Part shown: positions 28,726-48,591 of the stretch, in pieces
How positions within the stretch are numbered: the stretch's first letter is position 1
How the letters are laid out: the number at the start of each line of letters is the position of its first letter
Assembly (NCBI GenBank): GCA_977016875.1
Contig: CDRNST010000025.1
Location: 1,364,001-1,428,000, forward strand
Length of the DNA: 64,000 nucleotides
Reading direction: 5' to 3'
DNA from: Pavona decussata
Taxonomy: Eukaryota
Notes under the pieces: model-generated
Told to the model about the DNA's origin: nothing
Databases searched by the model: none
Seen by the model: only the letters and a program-made list of their open reading frames with translations
Position numbers and translations under genes: made by a program

Positions 28726-31700
28726 ATGGCTTCGCCTCAGCAAATTACAACGAATGTTGCTCGCAAGACATATTTAATATCGCGTCATGGGTTTGTGTTA
28801 CGAGTGACGCAAGATACAGTTGGGAGCAGTGAACATGGAACAAGCGATCCTTTTGGTAAGTATATAGTTGTAAGCAATGTCGGTCAATTGTTAATTGAGT
28901 TATAACTGTGGATGAAATCCCTAAGGCGAGACAATTCAAATTAAATTTAATGGGCAGTAATTTCCCCAGCCCTGCACTTTGTCGACTTGTGCTACTACGC
29001 AAATCCAGAAAATTGAGCGGTACTTTTCTGTGCTGCCGTATCTCATGCTTCAACGTCGTGTGTAAATCAAATCACAGAGACCCCAAGGATGAAAGTTAAA
29101 TTACTGCATGAGCGGTAATTTCTTTGGTAACTTTAGAAATCGTGAATCGATGGAATCTTAGCTGAATGTAACCAATCAACTGAAAGCCACAGGGAAGTAC
29201 TTTCCTGTGGTGCTGTTTATTATGCTGTACAGGTGATTCTTGAATTCGAAGTCTGTTAATAAAATTCTAAAGTGTGACTATTCGAATGAAAGCTACTGAG
29301 CAGAACTTTCCTGTGCTGCTGTTTATTATGCTGTTCCAGGTGACGCAGCTAACGTTTGAATCGGCCTAGAAGTGGATGAAATCCTTTAAAAGTGTGACCA
29401 TTCAAATCAAAGCTATTATAAGCAGTACTTTTCTGAGGTACATGCAGTTTCAATATGCTATAAAAAGCAGATCTATCCTTTGATACTGATCAGTTTTAAG
29501 TCAAACCATCACGCAATGAAAACTGTTTTGCTTCATCTTTTTGTGTTGGCTCTTGTTTTTCGAAAAAAAGGAATAATTAAAAATTATTTCCTTAGGCGGT
29601 TGGGTCTTTCCTTAGGCAATAACATCGAGAACATTCTTTTTAAAAATGTACATCCATAAGAACTTGAACACTAGAGAGTCAAAACTTAGAATATCGAATT
29701 GATAAAAAATGAGTGACCGTTTCAGTTACGAACCCAAGCAGCTGCAAAAGAAAATTCAGGCTTTCTTTAGTTTCATACCAGCTCAAGTTACACTACTGCG
29801 ATGGTGTCTCATCTATAGCAATTCTTTCATCCGTAATTCAAAATATACGAATTTGATATATTTCGCTACCGTAGTGTGATTATCATTTGCAAATGTTAAT
29901 TTGGTTTGCAAAAAAGAAAACGTTTCTGACAAAATACTTTTCTGAAGTGAAAGGCGATTTAAATTATCCAAGCCGGTCGGGAAAAGAACCGACACAGTTC
30001 ACTGGTTTGTTCTAAACAGATCTGTTCAGTTATTGTAGTCAGTTTTAATATTTAAATGGATCCTACATATCCGTTCCCAAAGACTTCAACATTCATTACA
30101 TCCTTTTACCTCGAGCAATGCAAGATAGTGTGATAAGATATACAGGCAGAAATTTAGCCCTTATCTATATTTAGTATTAGCTGGCTTTTTAGTGGAACGA
30201 ACTAAAATATCTTGACAATTTCCGGAGTTCATTTTGGAAAAACGTTCTTCATGCAACTAGCTAGGTCATTTTGCCATTGAATTAGCATTGCGGGGACATT
30301 TTCGAGGCAAACCGCCGACTATTTCAATCCGATACCAGGGCCGTCGCCCCTCTGTAGAAAAGGGACAATCTGGGGACGAGTTTAGTGTTACGTGTAAATC
30401 GTACGTATGGATGTAACTGCTCCTTACATCTCGATACCTTGATTTCGATCGATCCATAATATCTTGGCTTGAGTGGAAAAAAAAAATTAAAATAATTTAA
30501 GGATCCCAAAACAAGAGAAGAATGATGACAGTGAAGATCAGAATTTCTTGGAAGGTGTTGTTCAGTAAAATTATAGACATTTTCAAATAGCGTTAACAAA
30601 CTTGCCATCAGTTTTGAATTGAAGGAATAAAAACAAACAAACGAGAATACAGTGAGAAGAAATCACCTGGCCCCAGTTGTTCAAAGAGCAGATAACTTTA
30701 TCCAATGGATAATTAAATCGCTATCCAGCGAATAAAATGTACTTCAACCAAAGCTTTTGGCAAGTTTTTCAGACAATCCCTTACTTAAATTAGACAGACG
30801 CTTCTACTTTATACACAAATTATAGGGCTGAAGGGAAATTATTGCACGCATTCTATCTACCGCATAGCGACCTATCCAGTGGATAAAATTATCCGCCCTT
30901 TGAACAACTGGGAACTGGTCTCCTGCATGCGTTGAGGAGAAGTTTTATTGATTTTCAGCCGTCCTTGAAATGATGTCAGTCGGTCAAGGTGAGATTGTGT
31001 TACGAGGAGAAGCAGCAAATAGATACATTGGAATGGACAGTGATGGAAACCTTGGGACTTATGTAAGTGATAACTTCTTCCTTCGCTTCGTGTATAACGC
31101 AAGATACCTTTGCAAAAATTGTAGAAAAAGAAAAGAAAACATGCTTTGCAGGGGTTGCCCAATCATGAAAGTACTCACCTCTTATCATCGTGTCCAGGTT
31201 TCGATACCCTGACTCGGCGTCCTATGTGCCATTGAGTTTGTCGATGGTTTCAAGTCCATGCTCAGAGATATTTTTCTCCCAACATTTTTGAAACTTCAAT
31301 TATATATGGATGTCCTTAATAACCACTGATGGCTTAATTCCATTGATACTTAAATTTATGTACTTTTTCATTTAATAATATTTATTTATCGATCCGTTGT
31401 AAAGCTCCTTTTTAACTGGACAGCGACTACGTGCATCCATCTTGGATTAATGGCACATAGAATATAACATAAATTTAGTGTAAAACGAATTGTATCTTTT
31501 GTCTGTAAAGTATCTTATCTAATACAAAACAATTTGGAAACTTTGAAAATCAAGGAAATGTGAAAATAAGGTTATTGTCGTTGGTGTAAAACAAAAGAGA
31601 ATATTATTTTACTTAATCCTTTGCAGGAAACTTCACGACGTATTTGCACTTGTTGGTAATTGTAACTGAACCGAATTCCCCACTCTATAAATTATGGGAA

Positions 31701-32447
31701 GACTGGACCGAGTGAAAGCTTGTGGAACTTGCGTTAAAATTTTAAAATACTTCGTTATTAAAAGATAAGGCATTTAATTTGACAGCTTGCAGGTGATAAG
31801 TTATTTGTCAGTCTGACAGTTTACTAAATCAGTTTACGAATCATTTTAAAAATCTTGAAGCTCTTTTTGTTAAATCACAAAATGATCTTGACTTCACTTG
31901 ACCGGACTCCATTTACGTACACATATATTTCTCTATTCCTCAGTTGTACAGAGGAAGAAAACTGTGTGGACGAAAATATGAATGGGATTGTTGAATACTC
32001 AGAATGAAACAACTGAGGAATAGAGAAACCACGAGACTAGCGTTCCTGTATCGACGTCACAGCCCTTACTATCCCCAGTCTCCCGTTTTACGCGGTATCA
32101 TAACCAACTGGAAGTAAAATGTGACTCTTTATGCGCCGAGAAAAATTGATAAGGAATCTTTTTTTCGATCTTCATACAAGAACAATATGAAACAGATTTG
32201 ATTAAACAATTGAACAATTTCTGTCATTTACACATTTAACTCAGTACGTTTCTTCGTCTTTCAACAGAATTCATTAATTGAGAACTGTGTATTCAAAGAA
32301 CGTCATAACGTGAATGGCTACAGCTCATTCGAGTCCAGACCTCATTCCGGCTGGTATATGGCGCTGACAAACGATGGCAGAGCAAAGCCTGGACCCAAAA
32401 CTGCCCCGAGTCAGAGAGCTGTGGAGTTCTTACCAGGAAAAATTTGA
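28726..32447 (+). CDS. FGF-family gene A (FGF1/2-like, no signal peptide); exons 28726-28855, 30959-31062, 32268-32447; 137 aa
   Basis: Spliced protein MASPQQ..KTYLISRHGFVLRVTQDTVG..DPF/AVLEMMSVGQGEIVLRGEAANRYIGMDSDGNLGTY/NSLIENCVFKERHNVNGYSSFESRPHSGWYMALTNDGRAKPGPKTAPSQRAVEFLP. It has the canonical FGF 104-bp middle exon with phase 1/0 introns and fits the HBGF/FGF signature G-x-L-x-T-x6-N-C-x-F-x-E-x6-Y. Confidence 0.93.
29185..29480 (+). repeat. Degenerate tandem minisatellite (about 3 units) in FGF A intron 1
   Basis: Recurring gtactttcctgtggtgctgtttattatgctgtacaggtg ... gtgtgaccattcaaatgaaagcta. Confidence 0.75.
30667..30916. mobile_element. MITE with TIRs
   Basis: ccccagttgttcaaagagcagataactttatccaatggata / tatccagtggataaaattatccgccctttgaacaactggg. 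Confidence 0.75.
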
Positions 32448-33266
32448 TGATACTGTCACGAGATTGTCTTTCTTTGCTTCCGCCACGCGGAAATTTAATG
32501 TGAATATATGAAACATATTTAATCTTTTTAATTCAGACAACCATTAACTTTTGTTCTTTTAATTGACGAGTTAGTTTCTGGAGTTTACCGGTTTTAACTG
32601 ATTAACGCCGTCAACAGCTGCGTGAGTTGTTTTTACGAAAAAGAATTCTGTAGTATAATTGGCAACAGTCCTTGATAGCAGGAAGACAGTCATAATTTGA
32701 AGACATGTTTGGACCGTTACAACAGCCAATTTAAATCTGAAAATTTCCTACTTCGTGTTCTTCCAATTGATTCAGCAGTTTATATCATGCTTCTATCAGC
32801 TCGCAGCTAAAGATAAAATAATCTTTCATATCCACAAGAAAAAGACACCCTTAAATCAATATTTAAAACCCCTAGGTACGACTCAAGTAATTACGTATTC
32901 TTTTATTGTTCTCTTTACTATTTTGTTTGCATTCCTAATTAGTGTTATATTTTCATTTCGTATTCAATTCTATAACTTATTTCGTAACTTACAATGGTGG
33001 TTGTCAAGGCCGAAACATGTCTTCAAATTAGAAGGTGCTGTGTCTTCAAAGCTCTCGAAGCGCCATCTTGAAGAATGCGTAAATAATTATTTTCTTGCGA
33101 AGTGAGTGAAGCAAGGGTGTGGACGTTCGAAAATTTAATTTATGGTATCCACGCTCAAGTTGTTGAAGTGACTTTCCACTTAAATTACTCTTGCATTGCA
33201 AAAAAGTTAAACGACTTGACTTTGAACGCGAGCAAACATTATAGTTATACGATTAGACGCATAATC

Positions 33267-33545
33267 AAGGCTCGTTTAAACGGTTTAAACATGTAACCAA
33301 CATTCGTTCTACAAAAGTTGGACGGATGTTGGACAAACGTTGGACGAAGTGTTCAAACTGCTTCGACACCATTCAACCTTTTTTTTGAGAACAAAGGAAA
33401 ATGTTGTATGGATGTTGAATGAAAGTTTAAACCAATTTAAATTTGATCCAACAAGCTTTCAACAATGTTGAACGACCTGTTCAAACGCTCCCGACATTTT
33501 GTTCAACAAAGTGTTGAATGCATGTTGAACCAAATGTTGAAAAAT
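33267..33545. repeat. Dispersed CAACA/TGTTG-rich MITE-like repeat; related element at about 55752-56000
   Basis: Many internal caacat/atgttg inverted motifs, aggctcgtttaaacgg start. Confidence 0.5.
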
Positions 33546-33814
33546 TTATACATGCCGGGGGATGCTACTTAAAAAAAAATATAGGATTTTATCATCTTCA
33601 TTATCGACATAGTAACAAACATAAGTTGCAATAAATTAAGATATTATTAATAGCTATTATACCTATAAAATAAAATGTAAATGTTTGCACTTGCAATTTT
33701 TTGTGTAAATGTACTGTCAAAAACAGTTAACATTTGACAAATGGCGACAAGGAGTAATCTTCGAAACATCACGTAACTCTCTCATCACTGATTTTTAAGT
33801 TTTCCTTTGTCAAC

Positions 33815-33925
33815 TGCGCATGCGTCACACGCTTAACCGCTGTGAAGAGCACATCCTACCTATTGTCACTGCTGCACGTGTCATCCACGTGCACAGTTAG
33901 TACAAGGATTGTTGCATGTATAATA
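33815..33925 (+). promoter_or_regulatory. Putative core promoter of FGF B
   Basis: NRF1-like TGCGCATGCG (33815), two CACGTG E-boxes and TATAATA (33919) about 140 bp upstream of the ATG; possible short 5'UTR intron 33978-34040. Confidence 0.4.
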
Positions 33926-34056
33926 GAAAACTCGTCTCAAAACTGACTGGAGTGGTCCGCGATCACGAGTTATCGAGGTACACAGTTATTAATTTAGTTT
34001 CCATCTTTTTTAAATCGTAAACTATTTCAAGCTTTTAAAGTGTTGAACGACGGATC

Positions 34057-37000
34057 ATGGCTGGCTTGACACCGGAATCTCCGCACCTTGTCCGCTTAAA
34101 CTGCCGTCATGACTACTACCTACGAGTGACTGAGGACAGTGTGGAAGGAACAAAGGATAAAAACGATGACTACAGTGAGTAATAGAGGGATGACGCAGTA
34201 GTGAGAGCACTCGCCATCCACCAGTATGGCCCAGGTTCGATTTCCGCACTCGCGTCACATAATGTCCCTACTGGGCTTATAATAATAATAACTTTATTAA
34301 CGTGTCAAGAAATGTAGCTGAGGGGAGAAGTCCCCTCTACTAATAGTGGACACCTAACTAAATTCTAAAAATTCTAAAAAATTATAAAAATGAATTAAAA
34401 ATTTACATCTTAAACCATATATTTCCTCCGGGTACTCTTGTTATAGCCTCTTCAAGAAAAACATTTCCAAATTCCAATTTGATCTGGAAGTGTCTTCAAT
34501 TAGTGCTCTGTGCTAAATATATTTTTGTATTTATTTATTTATTTTCTGAAATATTTCTTGATTACAGCAGACATGAATATTTCCGGCAATATACAGCTTT
34601 TTCAATTAACGTTGCTGACAATTAAAGCGTAGCGCTAAGGCGATAAAACCGAAAACTGAAAATCTTTCCGGTATTTCGACTGTCAGTGCCTTAGGATGGA
34701 TGAAAACATCATAAACATTCAGTGCCTCTTAGATTTATTTCCTAGGAGTGAGTCACAGCAGAGTTTAAAAGCTTTATCGTCCTTTGGTCTTGTGATGTAG
34801 GCTTTTCCATAAAGTTAATTGAAAAAAAAAACGTATATGTATTGCGGATGAAAATATAAGGAAATGAAATAATTAATTAAGGAGTTTTGATGAAACAGAC
34901 CAAAGTATTTGCATACTTATTCTCCTATGAAAAGCGGTTTCGAGCTAATGACCTTTGCAACACAACTAAATGCAAATACTCGATCATTTGAGCTATCAAA
35001 GCCGTCCTGGGTATTTAGAACCCATAGAACTACGTTGTTTTCAACCCTAGTAAAGAACCATGATTATAAGATAAAATGAAACAAGAATTAAGCGAAGAAA
35101 AATTTGTAATGCTACTACGAAGGAACGATTCATTTACTATTAATCCGTGTTAGTTTTTACTTCTGTCAAACCTAGGCGGCATGAAAATAGCTTTAGTCTT
35201 AAGCCCAGCTGCTTGTAATTTTTAATTTTAGCAAATGTGCGGAATTTTACTTTCACTGCACTATGAGTCATACTTCACAATTTCGCTCTATTTTTAAATT
35301 CACTACCTTCTGCAATTTCTTCTTCATCAAAACCAAAATTTTAGACGAAACCGCAAAAAAAAAATGGTGTTTTTTTTTTCTATTTAAGATGAGCTAAAAA
35401 AAAATGAGGGAAGCATCAGTCATAATTAGGGATACAAAATTGACTCTATATTATTGCTCATAAAAAATGGGAGACAGCTATTTTGCATCACATGCTGTGA
35501 ACCTCACTATGAAAGCGAAGCTCAGTGCAAAACTTTTCATATGAATATTAGTTTTGTTTGCATATGAATGAAAACTAATTTTCATAACAAAAACTTTGCA
35601 CTTAGCCTCGCTTTCATAATGATGTTCAAAGCAACTCGGAAATGGCCTATTGCACTGGAGAGTGAATGTTTACTTGTTAAACTACTGGCAATACGCCCAC
35701 AGTGGTTGGTGTATGCGGTTTCTGTTTTGCCGATAATATTTCGACGGACGCGTATTAAGATTCCATGACGCTTTGTTCGGTCACGTTCATTCGATTTAGA
35801 TTGCAAGTGATCGAAGGTGAATTTAGCCAGAAGTACGGTCAAATTTGAATTGTCAATGAACTTTAATTTCAACAAAACTGATAGTTTTTCTCAACAAAGT
35901 AAACTAAAATTAAAGCGGTAGACGAAGCTAGTACTGGTCTACCCGCCTAGATTAGCTCTAGCTACTTGCGGGTTAGTGTTGTCTTTCAATTTTATGTTAA
36001 ACATTTTTGAATAAACTTGAAACTTGAAACTTGAAAACTTGTCATTATCCCCTGAAAGGTGTTCAAACAGTTGAGTCTGTGGGTGTAATAGCCCTTATCA
36101 CCCAGCGGCCATGTTGAGTTTCGGGAGAATAAAAAGCTTTGTTCTCGCACCGCAAGCCTCGGCCAGAAGCGAATTCAGTGCGAGGGTTTCCATGCAAAAA
36201 CAAAGCTTTTGATTTCTCAATATTCCTTGGAATGAATGCCATTATTCCTTTTATTTAGCAATCTTGGAAATGACATCACTTGCTGAAGAGGGAACTGTTA
36301 TCCGAGGAAAGACAGCTAATAAATACGTTGGAATGAACAGTGAGGGAAACCTGTCAACTTACGTAAGTGCAAAATTAATTTCCGTGCAAAATGCTCAGTG
36401 CCGCTATAATATTGTAAAATATAGTATACTCATCATAGTATATTGCAACAGTTTCATGCAACCTGGTTGGCTACCTAATTACGTACATAACGCAATGTGT
36501 CGTTCCTAGCTCATCTGGAAAGCCCGCTTTCTCCGACGAAATAGAAAAGGGTTTTTTTTTTTTGCTCTTGCTTTCTCTCATTTTTCTTCAGACGAATGAG
36601 GCATTTTTTCTGAGTTTATTTTAAAAAATATTGGAGATCTATCAGTTCTAGTATCTTGGCAGCCGGTCATGCATCGACGCAATCGTTAAAATGATGGTCC
36701 AGTTTAGTTAACAATTACCCTACTACTACACAGAAACTAGTGCCAATTGTCTTGGGCTGCGGGTGCCGGATGGCCAAGATTGAAACGGATTGTAATTAAC
36801 GTGAAAGAATTGGCCAAATTGTTCAAGTTCTTCCAGCCAGTGTATTTTAGAGAAATCGCTAAAAAGACTTGATTATAGTTTGTTCTTCCAAAGAGAAATT
36901 ACTTAATATTTCCCTGGCTGATCTAAGAGCAATTTGTTGTTAGAGAAAAGGTATCTTGTCAATCTTGTCAAATATTTAAAGCAGTTTTGATCAAAACACA

Positions 37001-37288
37001 GGGTAATGCCCGTGACAGTGTCCCATGTAAGAGTTTAAGACACATCATGTATAATTTGTATAAATTGTGATCTCTTAACAGAGTTCCTTGGTCGAGGATT
37101 GTGTGTTTAAAGAAAAACAGACTGATAGAAAAGGCTACAGCGCATTTGAATCCAGGCCCCATGCTGGCTGGCACCTGGCGCTGACCAAAGACGGCCGCAC
37201 AAAGCCTGGACCCAAAACTGAACGTGGCCAGAGAGCCGTAGCTTTCTTTAAAACGACAATTCATTGCCAAAATATGGAGAAAAATTAA
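34057..37288 (+). CDS. FGF-family gene B (tandem paralog of A, leaderless); exons 34057-34174, 36259-36362, 37082-37288; 142 aa
   Basis: MAGLTPESPHLVRLNCRHDYYLRVTEDSVEGTKDKNDDY/TILEMTSLAEEGTVIRGKTANKYVGMNSEGNLSTY/SSLVEDCVFKEKQTDRKGYSAFESRPHAGWHLALTKDGRTKPGPKTERGQRAVAFF; 104-bp exon 2; consensus splice sites. Confidence 0.92.
34187..34520 (+). mobile_element. tRNA-derived SINE, interrupted, in FGF B intron 1
   Basis: ggatgacgcagtagtgagagcactcgccatccaccagtatggcccaggttcgatt (A/B boxes) and tail tttcctccgggtactc..ccaaattccaatttgatc shared with 59712-59975. Confidence 0.65.
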
Positions 37289-37432
37289 CCTTGCATTAAG
37301 CAATAACTGATTTGTCAAATAAAAACATGTAATGCTCAGGGATGGATAGTAAATAAATAAAAAAATAACAAATTTAGGGAAGGTAGCACTAAGCTAACTC
37401 CAGGTTAATTAGGGTGGCCCTCAAAAGTCGAA

Positions 37433-37608
37433 TAGGCTATTTCCGAGTTGCTGTGAGCCTCACTATAAAAGCGAGGCTCAGTGCAAAACTTTTCATATGA
37501 AAATTAGTTTTGTTTGCATATGAATTGAAATAAATTTTTATAACAAAAACTTTGCACTTAGCCTCACTTTCATAATGAGGTTCAAAGCAACCCGGAAATG
37601 GTCTATTG
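37433..37608. mobile_element. Short palindromic MITE; second copy at about 35495-35651
   Basis: ataggctatttccgagttgc ... gcaacccggaaatggtctat. Confidence 0.7.
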
Positions 37609-38020
37609 GAATTTGGAGATGTTGGTTTTGTCGAGAGAGGAAAACTTGAGAACACGGATAAAAACCCTCGGAGCAGGGGTTCGTTTCTCAAAGCTCCCGA
37701 ATATCTTTAGAGTCCGGAAAAAATTACCTTCTCAACAGATTACCGTTTGTTTTTCGTCCAAATTTAACTCAATGTGTTTCTTAATCTCGAAAAACTTAAA
37801 TATTTTGGCATTCACGATTCTAAAAAATTGCATTTTTTTTTTAATGAATTTTGTACAAGTAAAATAGCTGTGCGGCTCCAAAATCTTCTCAGGAGTTCCA
37901 GGAGCGCACGCCAGGGACGAGAGCCAACAACAAACTTAATCCACGTGTGGCGTCAACGCCGAAAATCGAACCCGCGCCACACTGGTGGAAAGCGAGGGCT
38001 CTCACCACTGCGCCACCCCT
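37609..38020 (-). mobile_element. tRNA-derived SINE (minus strand) split by an inserted MITE relic (about 37675-37913)
   Basis: Reverse complement of the 59712 SINE head (cgaacccgcgccacactggtggaaagcgagggctctcaccactgcgcca) and body. Confidence 0.6.
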
Positions 38021-38074
38021 ACCTTTCCCACTCTCACAGCGAACTCTGAGGGAACAGCGTGTAGTCTAACCAAA

Positions 38075-38270
38075 GCACTTATGTCCAGAGATGCACCTAA
38101 CCCTGAATTTGGTTACATTTATATAAGACAGACATTTTTGTCGTTTCAATATGACTTCATGTTTGACAGAATTATTTGTGTTTTAGTAAAAATTTAGGTT
38201 AGGGGACACTTTGTGATGTCTATCATGCATTTCATGCATCTCATCAGCGTCCATTTCTGGACATATCTCA
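38075..38270 (+). repeat. Dispersed repeat; second copy at 47990-48185
   Basis: gcacttatgtccagagatgcacctaaccctgaatttgg...catttctggacatatctc is nearly identical at both sites. Confidence 0.8.
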
Positions 38271-38626
38271 AGCAAATCCTCCAATCACTGACACCCAAAT
38301 TGAGGATAGAAATGCGTCATTTATGACCATCAACCATGGTGCTACCTATATTGATACACCGCTGCTACAGTCGACACAATCGCCTGATCAAGACCAGTAG
38401 TATAGCGGTCAAAACATCACGATCAACACCCATGTGACACAATCGAAAGGCAAACGATTAAGTTTGATTTCACAGGCAATTTTATCTTTTAATAATTTTA
38501 TTTCAGACGTTCAATATCAGCAGTATTGATATGATAAATGAGTAGGAAGGAATGCGACCCTCCGTGTGTTTTTACTTTAATTTCGATTACATTGATTAAT
38601 TAACTTGCTGAGATAGAGCGTAACAG

Positions 38627-41600
38627 TTAGGGTTCAGTCACCCAGCAATTTCCCGGTCCATTTGCAGGATCAGAAACCATCTGTTTGCCGGTTTCATTGC
38701 TGACCTTGGTCCCGTCAGAGGCGTCAGTAGCCTCAGTAGCGACGCTTACTTTGCCACCACTGAGCACCAGGTACTTGCCTCTTTTGTCCTGGCTTTCTAA
38801 CTTGAACCCACCAGTAGCAGGCTCCTTTATAAATATACATTTCGGTTCATCTTTATCCTTTTCGCCCTGTTAAAAGACAGAAATAGGAAGCTTAAGCAGC
38901 GACGACGGCAACGGCAACGGCAACGAAAACGTCACCTGATTTATTTCATTTGCGCTACTTCGCGATTAATTCAACTCGCTCAACTTCTACAGAAACGGAG
39001 AACTATCAAGGAACCAAATTGATAGGAGTGGCGTTCTAGTTAAGAAGGAAAATGAAAAATTCACTGTCGTGCGTTCACGTTCTCCACAAAACCTTAAATG
39101 TGGTCATTTCACGTTGATCAATTGTTTTTGCTCATTAAACCTATTGCTTTGAGGCGTTGTCGTTGCCGTCGCCGTCGTCGTTGCTTAAACTCTCTAATAC
39201 CAGAAAAGGGACCACCTTGCCTTGGGTGAGGGTGGGTGGTTACGCAACTGACACCAACTATAGGCAAAATTTTCAATGCAGTCTAAAAAAAATTGCGCGA
39301 GACAAGAAATGGAATATTCATTTTGCTTTAATGTTTTATACGGCTTCCCAACAGGAGGTTGCAATCTTATTGTAATTTTAAACATAAATATTCGAGACAT
39401 GAGCAAGACACAATCTGTTTTAAGGTAGGTGTCAAGAGATGCAGCTTAGTTTTGATTGAATTCATTTTGTAACGACCAAGAAAGCTGTCACGGTAATTTA
39501 TAGGGAGGGGTTTACATTTCCGCGCATGTGAATGAATCTGAATGCTTTTTTTCTCTTTCTTATCAACTTTATGGCCTTAAAATCCCACTCACATGTAATT
39601 CAGTTATCACTTTCTATAATTAGTCCAAGCAAAATGACTGATGACTAAAATTCACAGAAAATGCTAGTGGATTGTACTCATATTGTCGATATTAAATTTA
39701 GCGTTGACCCGTAGGATTTATTCCACGGTTGATATTTTTACAGTTATTTACATGCGAAATAACGCAATCATATGAAAAAAATACCACCCAAGTTACCTAT
39801 TCCCTTCCGAATGGTTCATAAACAACGAGTAAAATTAAACAGCCTTAGATCATGGCAAGCAAAGGCGAAAAAGTACTTTGATTCAGGGACATACGCAGAA
39901 CCGTGAACCTCTCCCTTTACAATTTTGATATAGGACATTCGGTGATACTGCTGTAAAAAATATTTGAAATTAGCAAAATGGCCAATTTTGAAAGTCAGTA
40001 CCGTTTCAAATAGCGAAGATTCAGGAATTCTTGCAGACGTTTGAATGAAGACAAGAAAAACTTGCTCCTTACTTATACCAACATCCAGAAAATTCACAGA
40101 CTTAATGAAACTATATCTTCGCTATCTCAAAAGGCAAGATTCTCAAAGTTGGCCTTTTTACTTTCGCGGTTGCACTGGCCATTTTAACCTTGGGTAAATG
40201 GCTTTTTCCTACTGGGAAGCATTTTTTTGTGTGTAACCGATTTTCCCAGAGTTATAATTGCCTCCGGGAAATTTTCATGGATACGTCAAAAAGAACAAAA
40301 GAATTTCCCTATGACAGTTCCAGAGATAAGTTGCATGGGTAATAATTAAGAACCCAAAGTGGCTCAACCAATCACGAGAAAGTGAAATGTACCAAACACA
40401 AGAAATCACATGTTGTTTACGTGCTGTGTTCATCTTGGCGCCAAATCGCAATTTATCGGCGTATAACCGAAAGCATGAAATCGATCAAAACCCACAGTGA
40501 ACCAAACCAAAGCTATTTTCTCAAAAGGAAGCTTTAGGGAAGAGGTCCAGTGTAACCGCACCTATGGTCTTTGTCAAATTGAGCCAAATCGACCAAATTA
40601 ATTGGCACGTGCCAAATGAAACCAAAATTCCCGCGAAACTGCAAGGGTTCATAGTTCAGGTAATTGTTCAACTTTGTCAAGTGACGTAACGTGTGCCCGA
40701 TTTCCTTGAACATTTTTAGAATAGTTTTTAAACACCCACCTTATTAAAAAAAAAACAACTAAAAATAATAGTAGAATCAATCCTAGACTTATAAGTGCTT
40801 TCAATTACAAAAATCCCTTTAATGTGATTCATATGATCAATCACCACTTTGAGTAATCGTAGCTGAAGAGTTCTGAAAGGTTTTGGTGTCACCACCCTTT
40901 ACAACGCCCTTTTAACATTTGATCATGTGGATAACACGTGATTTTCGTTCTTGTACATCCTCATTGGTCGAACGTCAGCGTATGTGCCTGTCAATCCTTG
41001 ATCACGAGCGTTTTTAGACGACAAAGAATGCTGATGTTATTCTGTAAGCGAGGACAGTTTAATTGTCATTTTTCAATAGAGAAAATTTGCCACAGACTAA
41101 AAATGTTTTAAAGTAACCAATGCTAATGCAACTCAATACGGCTGTGTGACACAAATGTTTTCCTTTAAAAGACAAAACACAAATTTGTTCAAAATCTTGA
41201 TTTAGCCACAGAATAAACGTGAACTCACACGTTTCATTTGAAATTAGAAAAATTCCATGGTCAAATCCTTCATTAGGGTATTGTTTGTATACGACACTGA
41301 CGTTGTTTCGAGGCAAAAACAATAAATTCTTGATCAGCTTTTCCTGATTACAACCAGAGTGAAGGGATCAACTTTTGTTGCACGTCTTGAACATTTATCA
41401 TTCTGTTCGAGTGTATTAATAAAGTGTTCGCTCGATGACGACTTTGCAAGGGTATGGGTACTCAACGAGAATATTAAACCAAGGCACTTCAAATGCTGTT
41501 TTCTGTGTTTCCAGATCGTTTAGTTACCTTTTAACCCTTTAAGCCCTAACAGTGATCAGCATCAAATTTCTCCTTGTTATATCAATACTTATTCAACCAT

Positions 41601-43252
41601 GAGGTCATGGGACTTTAAGATACAATCATTCAAGATGAATTGTTTTGGTATTTCAATAACTTCTCCCAAGTACTTTTATGAGAAAAGTATGGGGCCAAGA
41701 TATGAGAATTTGTTCTTTGATATTACGGGTTAAAGGGTCAAAGACACATTTGCGTGTGCTGAATTAAATGATCTGTTCTGCTGCTTAAGTTGAAAATTTT
41801 AGTTGCAGAACCTTTTTAGGAAACGGAATCTTCTCTCCCGAATTTACGAGCTGTTGTTATCTTTATGAAAATGTTGGCTGGCCTTATTTCGCATTTTAAA
41901 CGAGACATTTGCGCCTCCGAAAATGAAAGGAATTGATTTTACAGTGTCGTGAAATTTTGAGCCGACATTTTGCTGAAGAAAACTATAGATTTTCTTGAAA
42001 ACAAAATACGAATTTCTGAGGTGATTAAGACCTTCCAAACAGATGTCAACCGAAATAAAGCCATTGGATGCTCCTGGAAAGTGACATCACTGCTTAATGA
42101 TAAGAAAAAACGAGTGCTTTTAAACTTGTTCACGGGGGTAACGAAAAACCCGGAACTAAATTCTTTACGACTGGTAGAGTAGTTAAGAGAAGTCAGAGTA
42201 GTGAAAGAGTACTAATTTATCACTCCGTTGCCAACAACAAATGTAAGGCCGTTTTTTGGAAAGTACTTTATTCTTACTAATTCGGGTTTTTTTCACATAA
42301 TTTTTAGGCCTTTTAGACGTATAATTTCATATTTTCCCATTAGATCTAAATTCTAGTATTTTGTAGTATCCTATTTTATAATGTAAAGTAAATCGTAATT
42401 CAGCTCAGAAACTGCAATGATTTATCTCATTAAACCTATCGGCTCTGTCTATCACTCTCCATCTCTCAGAGCCATTCACACAACTGGGCACTTATACGGG
42501 GTCACTAAATAGGAAGCTTGAATGTGTACTTGCAGTAAAATAGAAATTTATGATACTTACGAATAACTTGACAATTAGGCGCCCTTCCTCATCCTCCTGG
42601 ACCCCAACGTACTTTTCAGACGCTTCCAACCGTACGGAATCTCCTTCCGGAGAGATTTTCTTAATTTTGACTAAAAAAAGAAATATGATCACATTTTAGT
42701 TTCATTACGAAATGTGAAATTTGTAAAGCCATATGTACACCAGCTTGGAATAAAATTATCAAATGCAGTAATGTTCGTGGGGTATTTTAGGCATGCTAGG
42801 TACAGGGGACCACTCAATGAAAGTATTTTCTTCAAACACACGTAGATACGAGGAATTGAAAACGAACCCAATTCTTCGCACTTCTCCCATCACACAGCAT
42901 CAAGGGTTCTTTAATTTCCTTTATCAATCAATCTGTCACACTCAAGTAAAGATTAAGCAAAAAATAAAAGGCTACAGGCGTAACGTCCTTGACTGAAAAA
43001 GCGGCTGCCTTAACTATGGATTGACCTGCAATTCAACTTGAAGTTGACAGTTCTTAGTCACACCGCTTAAAAAAAAGCTACGTTTTGGCGACAGATTTAA
43101 TTAAAGGAGTTCCAGAAATTTTTTTATTACTTACCAAAGTCCTTACCAGAGTCGTCTGTTTTTTCTTCGATTCCTTTTACTTCGTCGTTAGTGATGCAAA
43201 GATATTTTTGACTTTTAGACCAACGCAAGTAAACTTCTGTTGTCTGCTCCAT
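38627..43252 (-). CDS. Divergent FGF-like beta-trefoil gene C; exons 43252-43135, 42670-42561, 38866-38627; 155 aa
   Basis: MEQTTEVYLRWSKSQKYLCITNDEVKGIEEKTDDSGKDF/VKIKKISPEGDSVRLEASEKYVGVQEDEEGRLIVKLF/GEKDKDEPKCIFIKEPATGGFKLESQDKRGKYLVLSGGKV... Same phase 1/0 intron pattern as A and B, strong GTAAGT donors, and retained YL, KYVG, GRL and CxF motifs. Confidence 0.78.
38884..39196. mobile_element. MITE-like element just upstream of the exon-3 acceptor of FGF C
   Basis: taggaagcttaagcagcgacgacggcaacggcaac / gttgccgtcgccgtcgtcgttgcttaaactctcta. Confidence 0.75.
39505..39845 (-). repeat. Inverted duplicate of 46085-46430
   Basis: Reverse complement matches gaaccattccgaagggaataggtaactcgggtggta...atgtgagtgggatttttaaggccataaag. 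Confidence 0.8.
40877..41312 (+). repeat. Direct duplicate of 43334-43783 (5' flank of FGF C)
   Basis: aaaggttttggtgtcaccaccctt..acaacgcccttttaacatttgatcatgtggata...tagggtattgtt..tatacgaca at both sites. Confidence 0.85.
41535..41737. mobile_element. piggyBac-like MITE (TTAA-CCCT termini); related relic at about 1955-2110
   Basis: ttaaccctttaagccc ... gggttaaagggtcaa. Confidence 0.55.
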
Positions 43253-45144
43253 CAAGCTGCGATAGTGGATAGCAAGCGAGATACTATTGAAAGTTCTCAG
43301 TAAGAAATCGTGGCTGATTACTGACGAATTCTCAAAGGTTTTGGTGTCACCACCCTTCACAACGCCCTTTTAACATTTGATCATGTGGATATATAACACG
43401 TGATTTTCGTTCTTGTGCTTGCTCATTGGTCGAACGTCATCGTATGTGCCTGTCAATCCTTGGTCATGATTATTTTGCTTTTTTTAGACGACAAAGAATG
43501 CTGACGTTATTCTTTACGCGAGGACAGTTATCATTTTTCAACAGAGAAAATTTGCTACAGACTGAAAATATTTTAAAGTGAGCGATGACAATGCCCACTC
43601 AAAAGGGTCGAGTGGCGCAAATGTTTTCCTTTAAAAGACAAAATACAAATTTGTTCAAAATCTTGATTTAGCCTGAGAATAAACGTGAACTCACTCGTTT
43701 ATTTGCAATTAAAACTGAAAAATGACATGGTCATATCGTTATTAGGGTATTGTTCGTATACGACATTGGGGTTGTTTCGTGGCATTGCTTGAGTTACACC
43801 TTGGTTTTAATTGCGGTCGACGTAGACAAAGCTCACTCCTGATAAAGATGGGAGTCGAGATTACATGGGACAACGTTAATTTTAACAGATAAATTTTGGG
43901 ACGTGTATCTAGCATCCCCCGCAGGTTTTGAATGGGCGGATGACATAATCACCAACTTACAATTAACCTACGATCAGGGGTCTGTTTTTTCCAAGCAGCT
44001 TACAATATGGAAGTAACAAGCCAATGCATAAGATATTCAGTCAGGAAATAAGAAAATGAATCTACAAGCTGATCTTCTGTCACAAGATGCATCTGTCACA
44101 AATGAAAGGAAGACCGCGTAAATAACTTTACACTTCAACCTTTCTCTTATATTCGGTCTCGATGATTTTTGGTACCAAATTTCACCATGCATTCACCATG
44201 CATTATACAAGATGCATTAGTTCTAGACTACAATTTTCAATGTAACAGCCAAATTTATCACTAGTCAGAATTGAATTGTTTTTAACAATACTGAAATTTA
44301 TTGTTCTTTGACAACAACCAAAAGTCGCCAAAATCCATCAAATCGGCAGACGTCGAAAGAGAAAAAGCTCGGGGGCTCGAAAGAAGCTCAATTTCATTAT
44401 AAATTATTAAGCCTTGATTGCAAAATTACAGGATGATCCGTGAATAGTTCATTGAACACACACAAATTGGCGGATGTACAAATGCGCATGCGCCAGGTAT
44501 AGACTGCTGATCTGATTGTACGCAAATGCTACAATCCGTTTTAGCACAAATGTGTATCGTTCTTTCGAAAGTAATTTTTGTCTATATACTCCACCGTTTA
44601 TTTTTTCTTAGTTAACGGCTTAAAACGGGATAGATCCCTTTAAATTCTGTTTGATTGTCTTAAGCTTACCCTATCCTGTAGCGATTCTTTTTTAAAGGTA
44701 CAAGAAATTGTTTCTACTTTTAGCTCTACATTTGAATAAGGAGAAAATTATTTTCTCTTGCAGAAATAGCAATATTGGGGTCAAACTATTGTCATATCGA
44801 GATCAATCAGTACTGAAAATTTTGGCGAAAAAATTGGCCATTGCTTCGGATATTGTTGTGGCAAGCCTAGAGAACCTCTGCAAAAGTCAGCTAAATCTAG
44901 TGCTGCCCGCCCCAATATCAGTTCAGCGGAAGCGACGGAGAAGAAAATACCGGCTCGTGTATACAATCGGTATGATGTAAAATATATAGTTTAAAAATAG
45001 CCTTGTAGTTTTGGCAGTAGAAAATTTTTGCCGGTGTGATTGTTTTCACGAAACCATTGATGGAACCGAATTTACAAAAGAAATTCATCTTGGAGACACT
45101 TCAGGGCCCAAAACAAGTCGAATTACAGACAAGTAAGACAAAAC

Positions 45145-48100
45145 ATGGATGGTTTGGTAAGAAAATGTTCTGCACAAACTCTGTTGTTTTGTCGTAACGG
45201 TGCATTCCTTCGAGTCACCGAAGACGAAGTTCAAGGAATTATTATCAATCCCGATGAAGATCAAGATGATGCATACAGTAAGTAGCATTAAAAAAAGAAG
45301 AAGCTAAAACAGAAAATTTTAAACGTTGTCATGAAGAAAGAAAGACATCACTCAGTATTTCTCAAACTGATTCATAATTCATGATCTTAATTGTCATAAA
45401 ATTTGATGAACGTTTGCTTTTAATTTCTCTAAAGACTGTTTCATCCTATTTTGAAACAAAATCCATTGTCTCGTTTTCTGAACACACTTTTTCTCGTGTT
45501 TGATGTATAACGTCAAAAATGCGGGACAACGGTGTTTTTTCCACCAATACTGTTAGCCCAAAGTTCGTTAACAAAGGTGGACGGGTTCATTTCGTAGATT
45601 AATCTAGCCCGTTAAGTTTTTGACGTTTTATCTCGTACTGCGAACTGTTAACAAAATTTTATTGCTTAAAACATTTTACTTCAAAATATTCATCTCACGA
45701 TGTTAGTTCATGAGATTAAATGTAAATACAACTGATATAAAACGTAACTGGTTCTCTAAAAAACTCTAAACTACAAGAACCATCGGAAGCAAAAGGAAGA
45801 CATAACGACTTCCGCGTAGGTTTTCCCAGTTTACATAAAATTTTTGGCCGGCTCAAAGAAGATATATTTAAAAATAAAAAAATTAGCTATTTTTGTCTGC
45901 CGATATGAAAAACAGGAAAGTGAAATCCTACATGACAAAAACATGTGATGGGCTGAGTAGCATTTATCTTCTCCACTAGGAATCGATCGCTTGAGTCTTT
46001 CGGACACGCTCTGGGTATTTAAATGGAAGGGTTCACGGTTCTGCGCATGTCCATGAATCAAATTGCTCGCTATGACCCAAGCCTGATTAATTTAATTCGT
46101 TGTTTATGAACCATTCCGAAGGGAATAGGTAACTCGGGTGGTAATTTTTTTATATGATTGCGTTATTTCGCATGCAAATAACTGTAAACACATCAACTGC
46201 GCAATAAATCCTACGGGTCAACTCTAAATTTAGTATCGACAATATGAGTACAAACAATTCACTAGCAATCTTCTGTGAATTTTGGTCATCAGTCATTTTG
46301 CTTGGACTAATTATAGAATGTGATTACTGAAGTACATGTGAGTGGGATTTTTAAGGCCATAAAGCTGATATGAAAGAGAAAAAAGCATTTTGATTCAAGC
46401 ACTTGAGCTGAAATGTGAACCCTTCCCTTTAAACACTGGGCTGCTGACATACTGGTAACAATCTAGCCAAACGTGGAGCGAATTTTATAAAATTAAAGAT
46501 TTCAAAAATGGATGTGCCAAAAATGTGTTAAGTCATCGAGTGTGTTTAAACAAATGTATTGCAGCGTCGAAAGAATGTACGTTGCTTCTTCTGCTTGCTT
46601 TAAGTTACGTTGAATATGTTATTGGCAATTTATTTTAAAGAGCTTGAGGAGAATACAAGTCGGGAGGTTCAGTAGAGGTGTATTGTATAGTACGGTATGC
46701 CATGGTGCGTTGCCATGGTTACGATGCATCACGTTTCGGTATGGCAGATATACAGTTTTGCTTTATTTTTCAGTCATTCTAGAAGTCATCTCTTTTTATC
46801 AAGTAAACGAAAACGAGGTAGAAGAAAACAAAGTTGAAGATAGAGTAAAAGGCGAGCAAAAAAAGCGAAAGAGAGACAAAGGAAAAGGAAAAGGAAAAGA
46901 CAAAAGCAAACTAGCGCAGAAAGTCGACGAAAAACGCGAAGTAAAAAGGAAGGAGCAAGAACAAGACGTGCAAATAATAAAAGCCATCCGTGGTGTCGTT
47001 TCCAATAAATATATTGCGATAGGTGACCATGGAAGACTTGAGACTACCGTAAGTATATTATCAACTTCTTTTTCCCTAAATGTACAGTGGAACCTCTCCT
47101 TACGGACACCTCTTTAATACAGACACCTCTCTATTACCGACAGTTCACTTGGTCCCTTGGAGACCGAAATCTGTATGGAGTGTGTGCACGGCGGCCATGT
47201 TGGAGGACTAAAACAATAGAAGATGTTTGCATAAAAATAGAATATATTTCCCAAAAGAAAATCATTGTATTGTTTTGGTCCTCCAACATGGCTGTAGTGC
47301 AGACACTCTTTAGAGGCTACCTCTCTAAAAAGGACACCTTTATAATGCGGACACTTAACCCTGTCCCCTTGGTGTCCGTAATAAAGAGGTTAGACTGTAT
47401 TTTATTTTTTGCGTGTCTCAGCATTTTGTTTTCATTTCTCGCTTACCTCACGTGGTTTTAAGGATGCTGCTCTAGCTGACTTTAATGACCAGCGCTTTTG
47501 GGTTATTATGAAAAAATTAGGAGTGTTGTCACTACGGTAAGGTGAGGTGTTTGTACCCCTAACCTGAGTATCAGGCTTTTGCACCCCTTGCTCAATTGAA
47601 TTTATAAACAATCAACGTCAAAATTACAGAATAAAGTGACAAAATCCCACAAAGAACGGAGAATAACAAAGCAAAAAAAAAAAATGTTTTGTGTTGCATC
47701 ATAGTAGTCACAGTGGGTATAACTGTAAGTATTGGTGCTGATATTAATATCTTAATATTAATATTAATATAATATAATAATATAATACTAATATTCATAT
47801 TAATATCTTTCACGAATTATTTTAAACAGATATGAATTCTTTTCATCTTTGTAAAGCGCTTAGAACAGGATTGGATAAGCGCTATATAAGTAGTTATTAT
47901 TATTATTAAAGGGTGCGGGCTCAGTTGAACGTTCACAACTTTTCTTAATCAGTGTGAACAAGTGCTAACAAATCTCTCAACGTTTTCGGGCACTTATGTC
48001 CAGAAATGCACCTAACCCTGAATTTGGGTACTTCATATAAAACAGACCTTTTTGTCGTTTTCATATGACTTCATGTTTGACAGAATTATGTGTGTGTTAG

Positions 48101-48591
48101 TGAGAATTAAGGTTAGGGGACACCTTGTGATGTCTATCATACAGGTCATGAATCTCATTAGCGTGCAATTCTGGAGATATCTCTCTTCGGAGAGGGGGTT
48201 GGGGGGAGGGGGGAGGGGAGTCGGCCCAGCACTCCACGGACCATAGGAGACCGGAAAGAAGCCCGGTCTGGATAGGGTTAATATTATAATTGTTTTAGGT
48301 CTTTGTGTTAGTTTTAGTATGATGCAGTTACCTTTCTGACAGGACACCCTAAATAAGGATTGTGTGTTGACCGAGCACCTGAGTCACACAACTGGTTACC
48401 GATGGTTCGAGTACAGATACCACGCCGGAAAGAGCTTGGTGCTGACAGAGGATGAAACGGAACTGAGTGAGCGAAACAGGGATTTTTTATATCTTATTAA
48501 TGGCGTTTTTCAGCCCTTCGAGATAGATTGCAGAGACAGCCTACTTCGTTACCATAATTTCGCAGCTTCGTCAATGCCATCTTTTTTGTAA
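45145..48591 (+). CDS. Divergent FGF-like gene D with a large charged insertion; exons 45145-45277, 46774-47048, 48343-48591; 218 aa
   Basis: MDGLVRKCSAQTLLFCRNGAFLRVTEDEVQG..DDAY/IILEVIS[K/E-rich insert]IIKAIRGVVSNKYIAIGDHGRLETT/DTLNKDCVLTEHLSHTTGYRWFEYRYHAGKSLVLT. Exon 2 is 275 bp = 104 + 171; intron phases 1/0. Confidence 0.85.
47085..47397. mobile_element. Tc1/mariner(pogo)-type MITE with a nested palindromic MITE (about 47175-47310); related relic at about 57460-57653
   Basis: ta|cagtggaacctctccttacggacacc ... ggtgtccgtaataaagaggttagactg|ta, TA TSD. Confidence 0.75.

What the first reader, a model, noticed from the sequence alone, without database searches (positions are those of the whole stretch)
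28726..48591. Hidden cluster of four leaderless FGF-family genes with graded divergence
Seen: four three-exon genes (+,+,-,+) with identical intron phases (1,0), middle exons of 104, 104, 110 and 275 bp, and no N-terminal hydrophobic signal peptide. Known: the 104-bp middle exon and lack of a leader typify FGF1/FGF2, which are secreted unconventionally. Inference: a local expansion in which A and B keep the canonical fold and C and D are neofunctionalising. These genes are easily missed or mis-merged by automated annotation.
Basis: partly seen in the sequence, partly recalled or inferred. Interest (0 to 1): 0.7.

Follow-up and report, generated by a model that had tools for sequence, protein, structure and literature searches.

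The report
Coral FGF cluster with fast-evolving member
Four real, intact, signal-peptide-less FGF-family genes sit side by side in this stony-coral genome: two are ordinary FGF1/2-type growth factors, one is a conserved altered copy, and one changes faster in its coding exons than in its introns, which is unusual for this family.

Summary
Four three-exon genes (A +, B +, C -, D +) have canonical GT-AG introns in phases 1 and 0. Their middle exons are 104, 104, 110 and 275 bp, and none has a hydrophobic N-terminus.

A and B are clear FGFs. Exon 3 alone scores 48.8 and 42.5 bits on PF00167, and the best solved match is FGF2. They keep the basic heparan-sulfate loop.

C and D fail Pfam and PDB searches exon by exon. 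They are still collinear homologues, forming one clade beside A/B (aLRT 88, UFBoot 95). A D-like gene from a third coral, with a plain 104-bp exon, bridges D to the canonical FGFs.

Both are expressed and spliced as modelled. RNA contigs join D exon 2 to exon 3 and C exon 1 to exon 2 at the exact predicted bases.

D is under purifying selection (dN/dS 0.22).

C is single-copy here and duplicated in a sister genome. It has dN/dS near 1. Its exons diverge 1.6-3.7 times faster than its own introns, and all 7 exon indels are in frame. This points to diversifying selection, not decay.

The 104-bp exon is a general FGF trait, not specific to FGF1/2. The claim that the cluster is "hidden" could not be tested. 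Searches and folds of the joined proteins were left out by rule.

The parts
28726..28855 (+). Gene A exon 1 (ATG to G|GTAAGT donor, 130 nt, phase 1)
   Evidence: In-frame stop 14 codons upstream.
30959..31062 (+). Gene A exon 2 (104 nt)
   Evidence: PF00167 22.4 bits, profile positions 35-64.
32268..32447 (+). Gene A exon 3 with stop (180 nt)
   Evidence: PF00167 48.8 bits. Also found by the genome-wide PF00167 scan. Best PDB match is FGF2 at 49 bits, with the basic loop motif kept.
34057..34174 (+). Gene B exon 1 (118 nt, phase 1)
   Evidence: In-frame stop 6 codons upstream of the ATG. 100% conserved in the sister genome.
36259..36362 (+). Gene B exon 2 (104 nt)
   Evidence: PF00167 17.2 bits.
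37082..37288 (+). Gene B exon 3 with stop (207 nt)
   Evidence: PF00167 42.5 bits.
43135..43252 (-). Gene C exon 1 (118 nt, phase 1, tandem donors at 43147 and 43135)
   Evidence: An RNA contig joins 43135 to 42670, skipping 464 nt with GT..AG on the minus strand. Matches B exon 1 at E 2e-6 pairwise. Single copy in the genome.
42561..42670 (-). Gene C exon 2 (110 nt). Its 3' half is hypervariable, with 6-, 6- and 12-nt in-frame indels against the sister genome.
   Evidence: An in-frame 3-nt deletion variant at 42589 is seen in RNA contigs. Single copy.
38627..38866 (-). Gene C exon 3 with stop (240 nt, acceptor ttttaacag, phase 0). An acidic Ser/Thr-rich tail replaces the basic FGF loop.
   Evidence: Single copy. 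The junction to exon 2 is not covered by reads.
45145..45277 (+). Gene D exon 1 (133 nt, phase 1)
   Evidence: Conserved in relatives at 85-100% aa identity.
46774..47048 (+). Gene D exon 2 (275 nt = 104 nt of core plus 171 nt of insert)
   Evidence: The acceptor position is conserved in L005 and L024. PF00167 14.1 bits at profile positions 41-66. An RNA contig runs 46918-47048 and then jumps to 48343.
46797..46967 (+). Lys/Glu-rich insert of about 57 aa in the beta4-beta5 turn of D (20 K+R, 15 D+E)
   Evidence: It is 18 aa shorter in L005 and absent from the D-like gene of L024.
48343..48591 (+). Gene D exon 3 with stop (249 nt). The basic loop is replaced by an acidic stretch.
   Evidence: Single copy.
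43956..44117 (-). Conserved non-coding block between C and D, covered by an RNA contig. Possibly a 5' non-coding exon or shared promoter.

Best explanation
This is a tandem cluster of four intact, transcribable FGF-family genes in a stony coral. All have the ancestral FGF gene structure and no signal peptide.

A and B, and a fifth gene E about 20 kb further on, are FGF1/2-type ligands. They keep the basic loop that binds heparan sulfate. Most likely they leave the cell by an unconventional route and signal locally through the coral FGF receptor. This step is inferred.

C and D are a sister lineage born from the same stock. An older coral relative has a single D-like gene lying tail-to-tail with an A/B-like gene. 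Both C and D have replaced the basic loop with acidic sequence, so they probably no longer bind heparan sulfate. This is inferred from sequence.

D then gained a charged insert of about 57 aa in a surface turn. It is held under purifying selection, which makes it a conserved, probably intracellular, FGF-like factor. The intracellular location is inferred.

C is transcribed and correctly spliced. Its copy number varies between sister genomes. Its exons change faster than its introns while the reading frame is always kept. This is the signature of diversifying selection on the loops of a stable scaffold. Its partner is unknown.
For: Gene models and phases.

Family membership of A and B: PF00167 48.8 and 42.5 bits on exon 3 alone. 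FGF2 is the best solved match, and K125, K129, Q134 and K135 are matched by K, K, Q and R.

No leader.

Homology of C and D:
- Exon-by-exon matches in order.
- hhalign of D exon 3 against a 19-sequence coral FGF exon-3 profile gives P 1e-4.
- The C+D clade has aLRT 88 and UFBoot 95.
- The bridging D-like gene in L024 scores 20.9 bits on exon 2 and 15.3 bits on exon 3 against Pfam.

Expression: exact spliced contigs for D (47048|48343) and C (43135|42670). There are no retrocopies in the genome.

Selection:
- D has dN/dS 0.22 over 170 codons at dS 0.45.
- C has dN/dS 0.96-1.21.
- C exon versus non-coding divergence is .180 vs .049.116 vs .072 and .151 vs .073 (Fisher p 4e-18.002, 5e-7). The controls B and D show no excess.
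- Exon indels are multiples of 3 in 7 of 7 cases, against 4 of 13 in non-coding sequence.

Cnidarian leaderless FGF-1 homologues are already described (bioRxiv 10.1101/596734; PMC3420111).
Against: - C exons get no Pfam or PDB hit, and D gets only a weak exon-2 hit. hhalign for C exon 3 is weak (P 0.028).
- The fold of C and D is untested.
- Only two of eight junctions are read-supported. The runs are labelled 'RNA?' by guess.
- Synonymous divergence in C exons is also raised, so misalignment near indels or a mutational cause may inflate the excess.
- Only three C sequences exist, two of them from one genome, so no site test was possible.
- The KKRKR-like stretch of the D insert is not conserved in L005, which weakens a nuclear reading.
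- No secretion, heparin or receptor data exist.
Confidence: 0.8

Rival explanations
1. C is a relaxed or decaying copy (a young pseudogene that is still transcribed). Its dN/dS near 1 is neutrality, not selection.
For: dN/dS is 0.96-1.21. There is no Pfam or PDB signal. No relative was found beyond the sister genome. The basic loop and the FLP-type end are lost.
Against: Three copies keep full reading frames and splice sites. All 7 exon indels are in frame, against 4 of 13 in flanks. Exons diverge 1.6-3.7 times faster than the introns and 3' flank of the same gene, whereas neutrality predicts equality. Invariant blocks persist between the variable loops. The gene is spliced correctly in RNA contigs.
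Confidence: 0.15
2. The four genes are conventional secreted FGFs whose signal-peptide exon lies upstream and was missed, so 'leaderless' is a modelling artefact.
For: RNA 5' ends were not mapped. Contigs run upstream of the C start codon, and a transcribed conserved block lies at 43956-44117.
Against: In-frame stops lie 6-39 codons upstream of each ATG. The same Met-start alignment holds in the sister genome, L005 and L024, and in gene E. The block at 43956-44117 is not coding-conserved in L005. Leaderless FGF-1 homologues are known in Hydra and Nematostella.
Confidence: 0.07
3. C and D are still ordinary extracellular FGFR ligands. Their changes only tune diffusion range, through lower heparan-sulfate affinity as in endocrine FGFs, and do not give a new function.
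For: Core framework residues are kept. The Tyr/Phe matching FGF2 Y103 is retained in the alignment. Vertebrate FGF19/21/23 show that weak heparan-sulfate binding is compatible with receptor signalling (established knowledge).
Against: A 57-aa charged insert in a core turn of D and an acidic 40-aa tail in C have no counterpart in known ligands. C evolves far faster than a ligand tied to one conserved receptor would be expected to. None has a leader.
Confidence: 0.2

Closest known systems
FGF1/FGF2 subfamily (vertebrate acidic and basic FGF) and the cnidarian FGF1/2-like group (six Nematostella genes, Hydra HyFGF-1)
   Same: A and B (and E) are about 140 aa and little more than the core domain. 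They have no signal peptide. FGF2, then FGF1, are the best solved matches. They keep the basic Gly-box loop and have three coding exons with a 104-nt middle exon.
   Different: Grouping with bilaterian FGF1/2 was not tested by a tree here, and the literature gives it low support for cnidarians (PMC3420111). K119/R120 of FGF2 are not matched in A. Secretion route and receptor are untested.
FGF homologous factors (FGF11-14), the intracellular FGFs
   Same: D resembles them in having no leader, having lost the heparan-sulfate or ligand-type surface, carrying a basic, partly NLS-like segment, and being conserved under purifying selection.
   Different: There is no sequence affinity to FHFs: PDB searches with D exon 3 and its profile find nothing. 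D descends from the coral FGF1/2-like stock. Its basic segment is an insert inside the core rather than an N-terminal extension, and it is only partly conserved.
Accelerated-evolution gene families, in which exons change faster than introns (for example snake venom phospholipase A2 and conotoxins; from general knowledge, not checked in papers here)
   Same: C shows exon divergence above intron divergence, clustered in-frame indels, conserved framework blocks and copy-number change between close relatives.
   Different: C has no signal peptide, no cysteine framework and no known target. Only three sequences exist. No FGF-fold example of this behaviour is known to me.

Membership tests
FGF family (Pfam PF00167, beta-trefoil growth factors) | Significant match to the PF00167 profile | tested here: met
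   For A and B only. Exon 3 alone scores 48.8 and 42.5 bits against a cut-off of 24, and exon 2 scores 22.4 and 17.2 bits.
FGF family (Pfam PF00167, beta-trefoil growth factors) | Significant match to the PF00167 profile, genes C and D | tested here: not met
   Tested exon by exon. D exon 2 scores 14.1 bits (E .049) and D exon 3 gives nothing. C gives nothing. The joined proteins were not scanned, because they have no reference. The D-like gene of L024 reaches 20.9 and 15.3 bits on two exons.
FGF family (Pfam PF00167, beta-trefoil growth factors) | Ancestral gene structure: two introns inside the core at fixed places, phases 1 and 0, middle exon about 104 nt | tested here: met
   All four genes have it. 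C has +6 nt and D +171 nt, both in frame. The feature is described as ancestral in 10.1101/2024.08.30.610304.
FGF family (Pfam PF00167, beta-trefoil growth factors) | Twelve-strand beta-trefoil fold | not testable with these tools
No full-length relative was returned by the searches.
FGF family (Pfam PF00167, beta-trefoil growth factors) | Homology to bona fide FGFs shown through intermediates or phylogeny | tested here: met
   The C+D clade sits beside A/B (aLRT 88, UFBoot 95). L024 D-like exon 3 hits A exon 3 at 1.6e-9 and D exon 3 at 1.7e-12. For C alone the support is weaker.
FGF1/2-type leaderless heparin-binding ligands | No N-terminal signal peptide | tested here: met
   Shown by hydrophobicity and upstream stops. 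SignalP was not available and 5' ends were not mapped.
FGF1/2-type leaderless heparin-binding ligands | Basic heparan-sulfate-binding loop between strands 10 and 12 | tested here: met
   A and B keep the K..K....Q(K/R)A pattern aligned to FGF2. C and D have acidic replacements, so the feature is not met for them.
FGF1/2-type leaderless heparin-binding ligands | Groups with bilaterian FGF1/2 in a tree | not tested
   No bilaterian sequences were available as files. The only evidence is the order of PDB matches: FGF2 49 bits, FGF1 39, FGF18 38, FGF8 36.
FGF homologous factors (FGF11-14) | Sequence affinity to FHF cores | tested here: not met
   D exon 3, and its profile, give no PDB match at E up to 10.

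The most novel reading that the evidence does not exclude
Gene C is the first FGF-fold protein recruited as a hypervariable binding scaffold. It would be a coral-lineage-restricted, copy-number-variable, leaderless trefoil whose loops are under diversifying selection. That implies an arms-race partner, such as a symbiont, a pathogen, self/non-self recognition or gametes, rather than a developmental receptor.
Probability: 0.3. Interest if true: 0.7.

Novelty: new variant of a known kind. Interest (0 to 1): 0.5.

Why it matters
FGFs are usually treated as slowly evolving developmental ligands. Here one small coral locus shows three fates of duplicates side by side:
- conserved FGF1/2-type ligands (A, B);
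- a conserved derivative that has lost the heparan-sulfate loop and gained a charged insert (D);
- a paralogue whose exons outrun its introns (C).

If C is truly under diversifying selection, the FGF trefoil joins the scaffolds that animals reuse for fast-evolving recognition. Corals would then offer a tractable case.

The locus also gives exact, partly read-verified models for genes that domain scans do not recognise. D and C get no significant Pfam hit, so they are likely to be unnamed or missed in annotation.

Tried and rejected
1. I first took the ORF at 44192-44000 (minus strand) as C exon 1, broken by a 16-nt tandem duplication, which would have made C a pseudogene. This is rejected. RNA contigs join C exon 2 to an exon ending at 43135. 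The 44-kb block is also not coding-conserved in L005.

2. I considered two overlapping frames at 42130-41850 and the 93-aa ORF at 40097-39816 as C exon 3. Both are rejected. Neither has an acceptor in phase, the ORF overlaps a repeat, and the true exon at 38866-38627 was found through the sister genome.

3. An alternative 245-nt D exon 2 starting at 46804 is rejected. Homology of the first residues and the conserved acceptor in L005 and L024 favour 46774.

4. The D insert as a retained intron is rejected. The spliced contig carries its 3' part, and it stays in frame in relatives.

5. phmmer and profile searches of C and D exon 3 against PDB found nothing.

6. The ESM Atlas search on D exon 3 gave chance-level hits.

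7. The full library search with the D exon-3 profile gave a single hit.

8. Word searches for C found only the window's own genome and the sister genome.

9. Matus et al. 2007 (PMC4580332) is not held.

10. Everything was done exon by exon by reference. The tree used exon-wise alignments concatenated inside the sandbox.

The N run at 8045-8182 was left untouched.
Full report
**Setting.** The window is contig C25:1364001-1428000 of a 602-Mb assembly. Earlier notes of this scan and the sequencing-run labels place it in a stony coral. A scan of the whole genome with PF00167 finds 24 exon-level FGF matches on 13 contigs, several of them in tandem groups. The family is therefore large here, and this locus is one of several clusters.

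**Observation.** I read the junctions base by base and obtained four clean three-exon models.

| Gene | Strand | Exon 1 | Exon 2 | Exon 3 | Protein |
|---|---|---|---|---|---|
| A | + | 28726-28855 | 30959-31062 | 32268-32447 | 137 aa |
| B | + | 34057-34174 | 36259-36362 | 37082-37288 | 142 aa |
| C | - | 43252-43135 | 42670-42561 | 38866-38627 | 155 aa |
| D | + | 45145-45277 | 46774-47048 | 48343-48591 | 218 aa |

All introns are GT..AG, in phase 1 and then phase 0.

No first exon has more than four consecutive hydrophobic residues. In-frame stops lie 6 to 39 codons upstream of each start.

An ORF at 44192 and two candidates for exon 3 had to be dropped.

**Family.**
- For A and B, exon 3 alone passes the Pfam FGF threshold (48.8 and 42.5 bits) and exon 2 adds 22 and 17 bits.
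- A exon 3 matches FGF2 best among solved structures (49 bits), then FGF1 (39), FGF18 and FGF8. It aligns K, K, Q and R to the heparin-binding K125, K129, Q134 and K135 of FGF2.
- D gets only 14 bits on exon 2.
- C gets nothing. Neither C nor D exon 3 finds anything in the PDB, even as a profile.

Homology of C and D therefore rests on other evidence:
- each of their three exons matches the same exon of A or B, in order and with the same phases;
- hhalign of D exon 3 against a 19-sequence profile of this coral's FGF exon 3 gives P 1e-4, while C gives only P 0.028;
- there is a bridging gene, described next.

**Relatives.** The protein collection holds no spliced model of C or D. It holds only unspliced ORF fragments from other coral assemblies. 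These fragments led to orthologous DNA in three assemblies.

- *Sister genome* (ENA ERZ25073805; L003, L004, L006, L007; 91-97% nucleotide identity). It has B and D. It carries a 7.7-kb tandem duplication that gives two complete C genes plus a dead copy of D exon 1.
- *More distant coral* (ERZ26692694, L005; about 70-78% identity in aligned blocks). It has all three D exons with conserved splice sites and a shorter insert.
- *Third coral* (ERZ25071802, L024). The full library search with the D exon-3 profile returned one hit, from this coral. L024 carries a D-like three-exon gene with an ordinary 104-nt middle exon and no insert. It lies tail-to-tail with an A/B-like gene, with nothing of the C type between them. 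Its exon 3 matches both A (1.6e-9) and D (1.7e-12). Its exons reach 20.9 and 15.3 bits on Pfam.

An ML tree on exon-wise alignments (137 columns) puts all C-type and D-type genes in one clade (aLRT 88, UFBoot 95). That clade sits next to A/B. C lies on a very long branch of 2.0 substitutions per site.

Amino-acid identities are graded: A-B 51%, A/B-D 34-38%, A/B-C 23-24% and C-D 26%.

**Expression.** One reads call was allowed, so I laid two runs of the same species and two coral metatranscriptomes on 42480-48479.
- One 269-nt contig lies on 46918-47048 and continues at 48343-48479. This is the exact D exon 2/3 junction, and it carries part of the insert.
- One contig joins 42670 to 43135, skipping 464 nt with GT..AG on the minus strand and 54 nt on its shorter side. 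This is the exact C exon 1/2 junction.
- A weaker joint, 42622 to 43147, suggests a minor in-frame isoform of C.
- RNA contigs also carry an in-frame 3-nt deletion at 42589.

C and D exons are single-copy in the genome, so these contigs are transcripts and not retrocopies. Junctions of A and B, D exon 1-2 and C exon 2-3 were not covered.

**Selection.**
- *D against L005:* dN/dS is 0.22 over 170 codons at dS 0.45. Against the sister genome it is 0.28-0.34. D is a constrained gene.
- *B against the sister genome:* it has too few changes to judge, and its exon and non-coding divergence are alike (.028 vs .031).
- *C:* pairwise dN/dS among the window copy and the two sister copies is 0.96-1.21. 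All reading frames and splice sites are nonetheless intact. All 7 exon indels are multiples of three, against 4 of 13 in the flanks.
- *C, exon against non-coding divergence:* exon divergence exceeds that of the gene's own introns and 3' flank in every pair.

| Pair | Exon | Non-coding | Fisher p |
|---|---|---|---|
| window C vs sister copy 1 | .180 | .049 | 4e-18 |
| window C vs sister copy 2 | .116 | .072 | .002 |
| sister copy 1 vs copy 2 | .151 | .073 | 5e-7 |

D shows the opposite pattern (.035 vs .059).

Invariant blocks persist in C between the variable stretches. A neutral pseudogene should not diverge faster than its introns, so diversifying selection is the better reading.

There are three caveats:
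- synonymous divergence is also raised;
- alignment near indels may inflate the counts;
- there are only three sequences, two of them from one genome.

**What changed in C and D.** In the exon-wise alignment both genes lose the basic loop that A, B, E and FGF2 share. D has an acidic stretch of about 8 fewer residues. C has a roughly 40-aa acidic Ser/Thr-rich tail.

D also carries an insert of about 57 aa (20 Lys+Arg, 15 Asp+Glu). By alignment to FGF2 it lies in the turn between strands 4 and 5 (the strand assignment is from my own knowledge of FGF2). The KKRKR-type stretch in it is missing from L005, which keeps only the distal part of the insert.

**Mechanism (inferred).** A, B and E should act like FGF1/2: leaderless, heparan-sulfate-bound, short-range ligands. 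Leaderless FGF-1 homologues are already described in Hydra and Nematostella, and six Nematostella FGFs group loosely with FGF1/2. D is probably an intracellular FGF-like factor. In this it is analogous to FHFs, but it is not one of them. C is a trefoil-type scaffold with fast-changing loops, and its partner is unknown.

**History (inferred).** The ancestral state was probably a pair of genes lying tail-to-tail. A/B then duplicated in tandem. The partner gene duplicated in inverted orientation to give C and D head-to-head. D acquired its insert. C accelerated, and it duplicated again in the sister genome.

**Comparison and verdict.**
- The 104-nt exon and the core introns are pan-FGF traits, not specific to FGF1/2.
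- The fold of C and D is untested.
- The claim that the cluster is 'hidden' cannot be judged here.

A and B are new members of a known kind. D, and especially C, are new variants of it.

Noticed in passing
L001:4993-9944 (= window coordinates about 68993-73944, beyond the window end): A fifth canonical leaderless three-exon FGF gene ('E', + strand). Exons are 4993-5125, 8692-8795 (104 nt) and 9777-9947, in phases 1 and 0.
   Followed up: partly
window 43956-44918 (minus strand block 44117-43956): A roughly 1-kb block between C and D aligns to the distant coral L005 at 70% identity but is not coding-conserved. An RNA contig covers 43956-44117, and a GTAAGC donor near 44003 is conserved. It may be a 5' non-coding exon of C or a shared bidirectional promoter.
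   Followed up: partly
L006/L007 (sister genome, ENA ERZ25073805 ctg133244): A 7.7-kb tandem duplication carries a second complete C gene and a copy of D exon 1 with an in-frame stop. The window genome has a single C that looks mosaic relative to the two sister copies: its last intron stretch is closest to copy 1, and its 3' flank is closest to copy 2.
   Followed up: partly
window 46063-46435, 47083-47400, 47991-48183; also 39579-39919, 40863-41315 and 43321-43766: Dispersed repeats sit inside the D and C introns. They have very high, multi-contig RNA depth at 90-95% identity. A 93-aa ORF at 40097-39816 in C intron 2 overlaps one of them and mimics an exon.
   Followed up: partly
L004:12282-17101: The sister genome has a roughly 4.8-kb insertion just downstream of D that the window lacks at about 48955. 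It carries a reverse-transcriptase ORF (PF00078).
   Followed up: no
window 42589 and 42622-43147: RNA contigs show an in-frame 3-nt deletion variant in the hypervariable half of C exon 2. They also show a possible minor in-frame isoform that uses a donor 12 nt upstream and an acceptor 48 nt inside exon 2.
   Followed up: no
G000 contigs C88 (3011288-3061615), C132 (542853-561919), C219 (451802-476865): Three further tandem groups of FGF exon-3 matches occur elsewhere in the genome. With at least 18 exon-3 hits in total, this coral has roughly 20 or more FGF genes.
   Followed up: no
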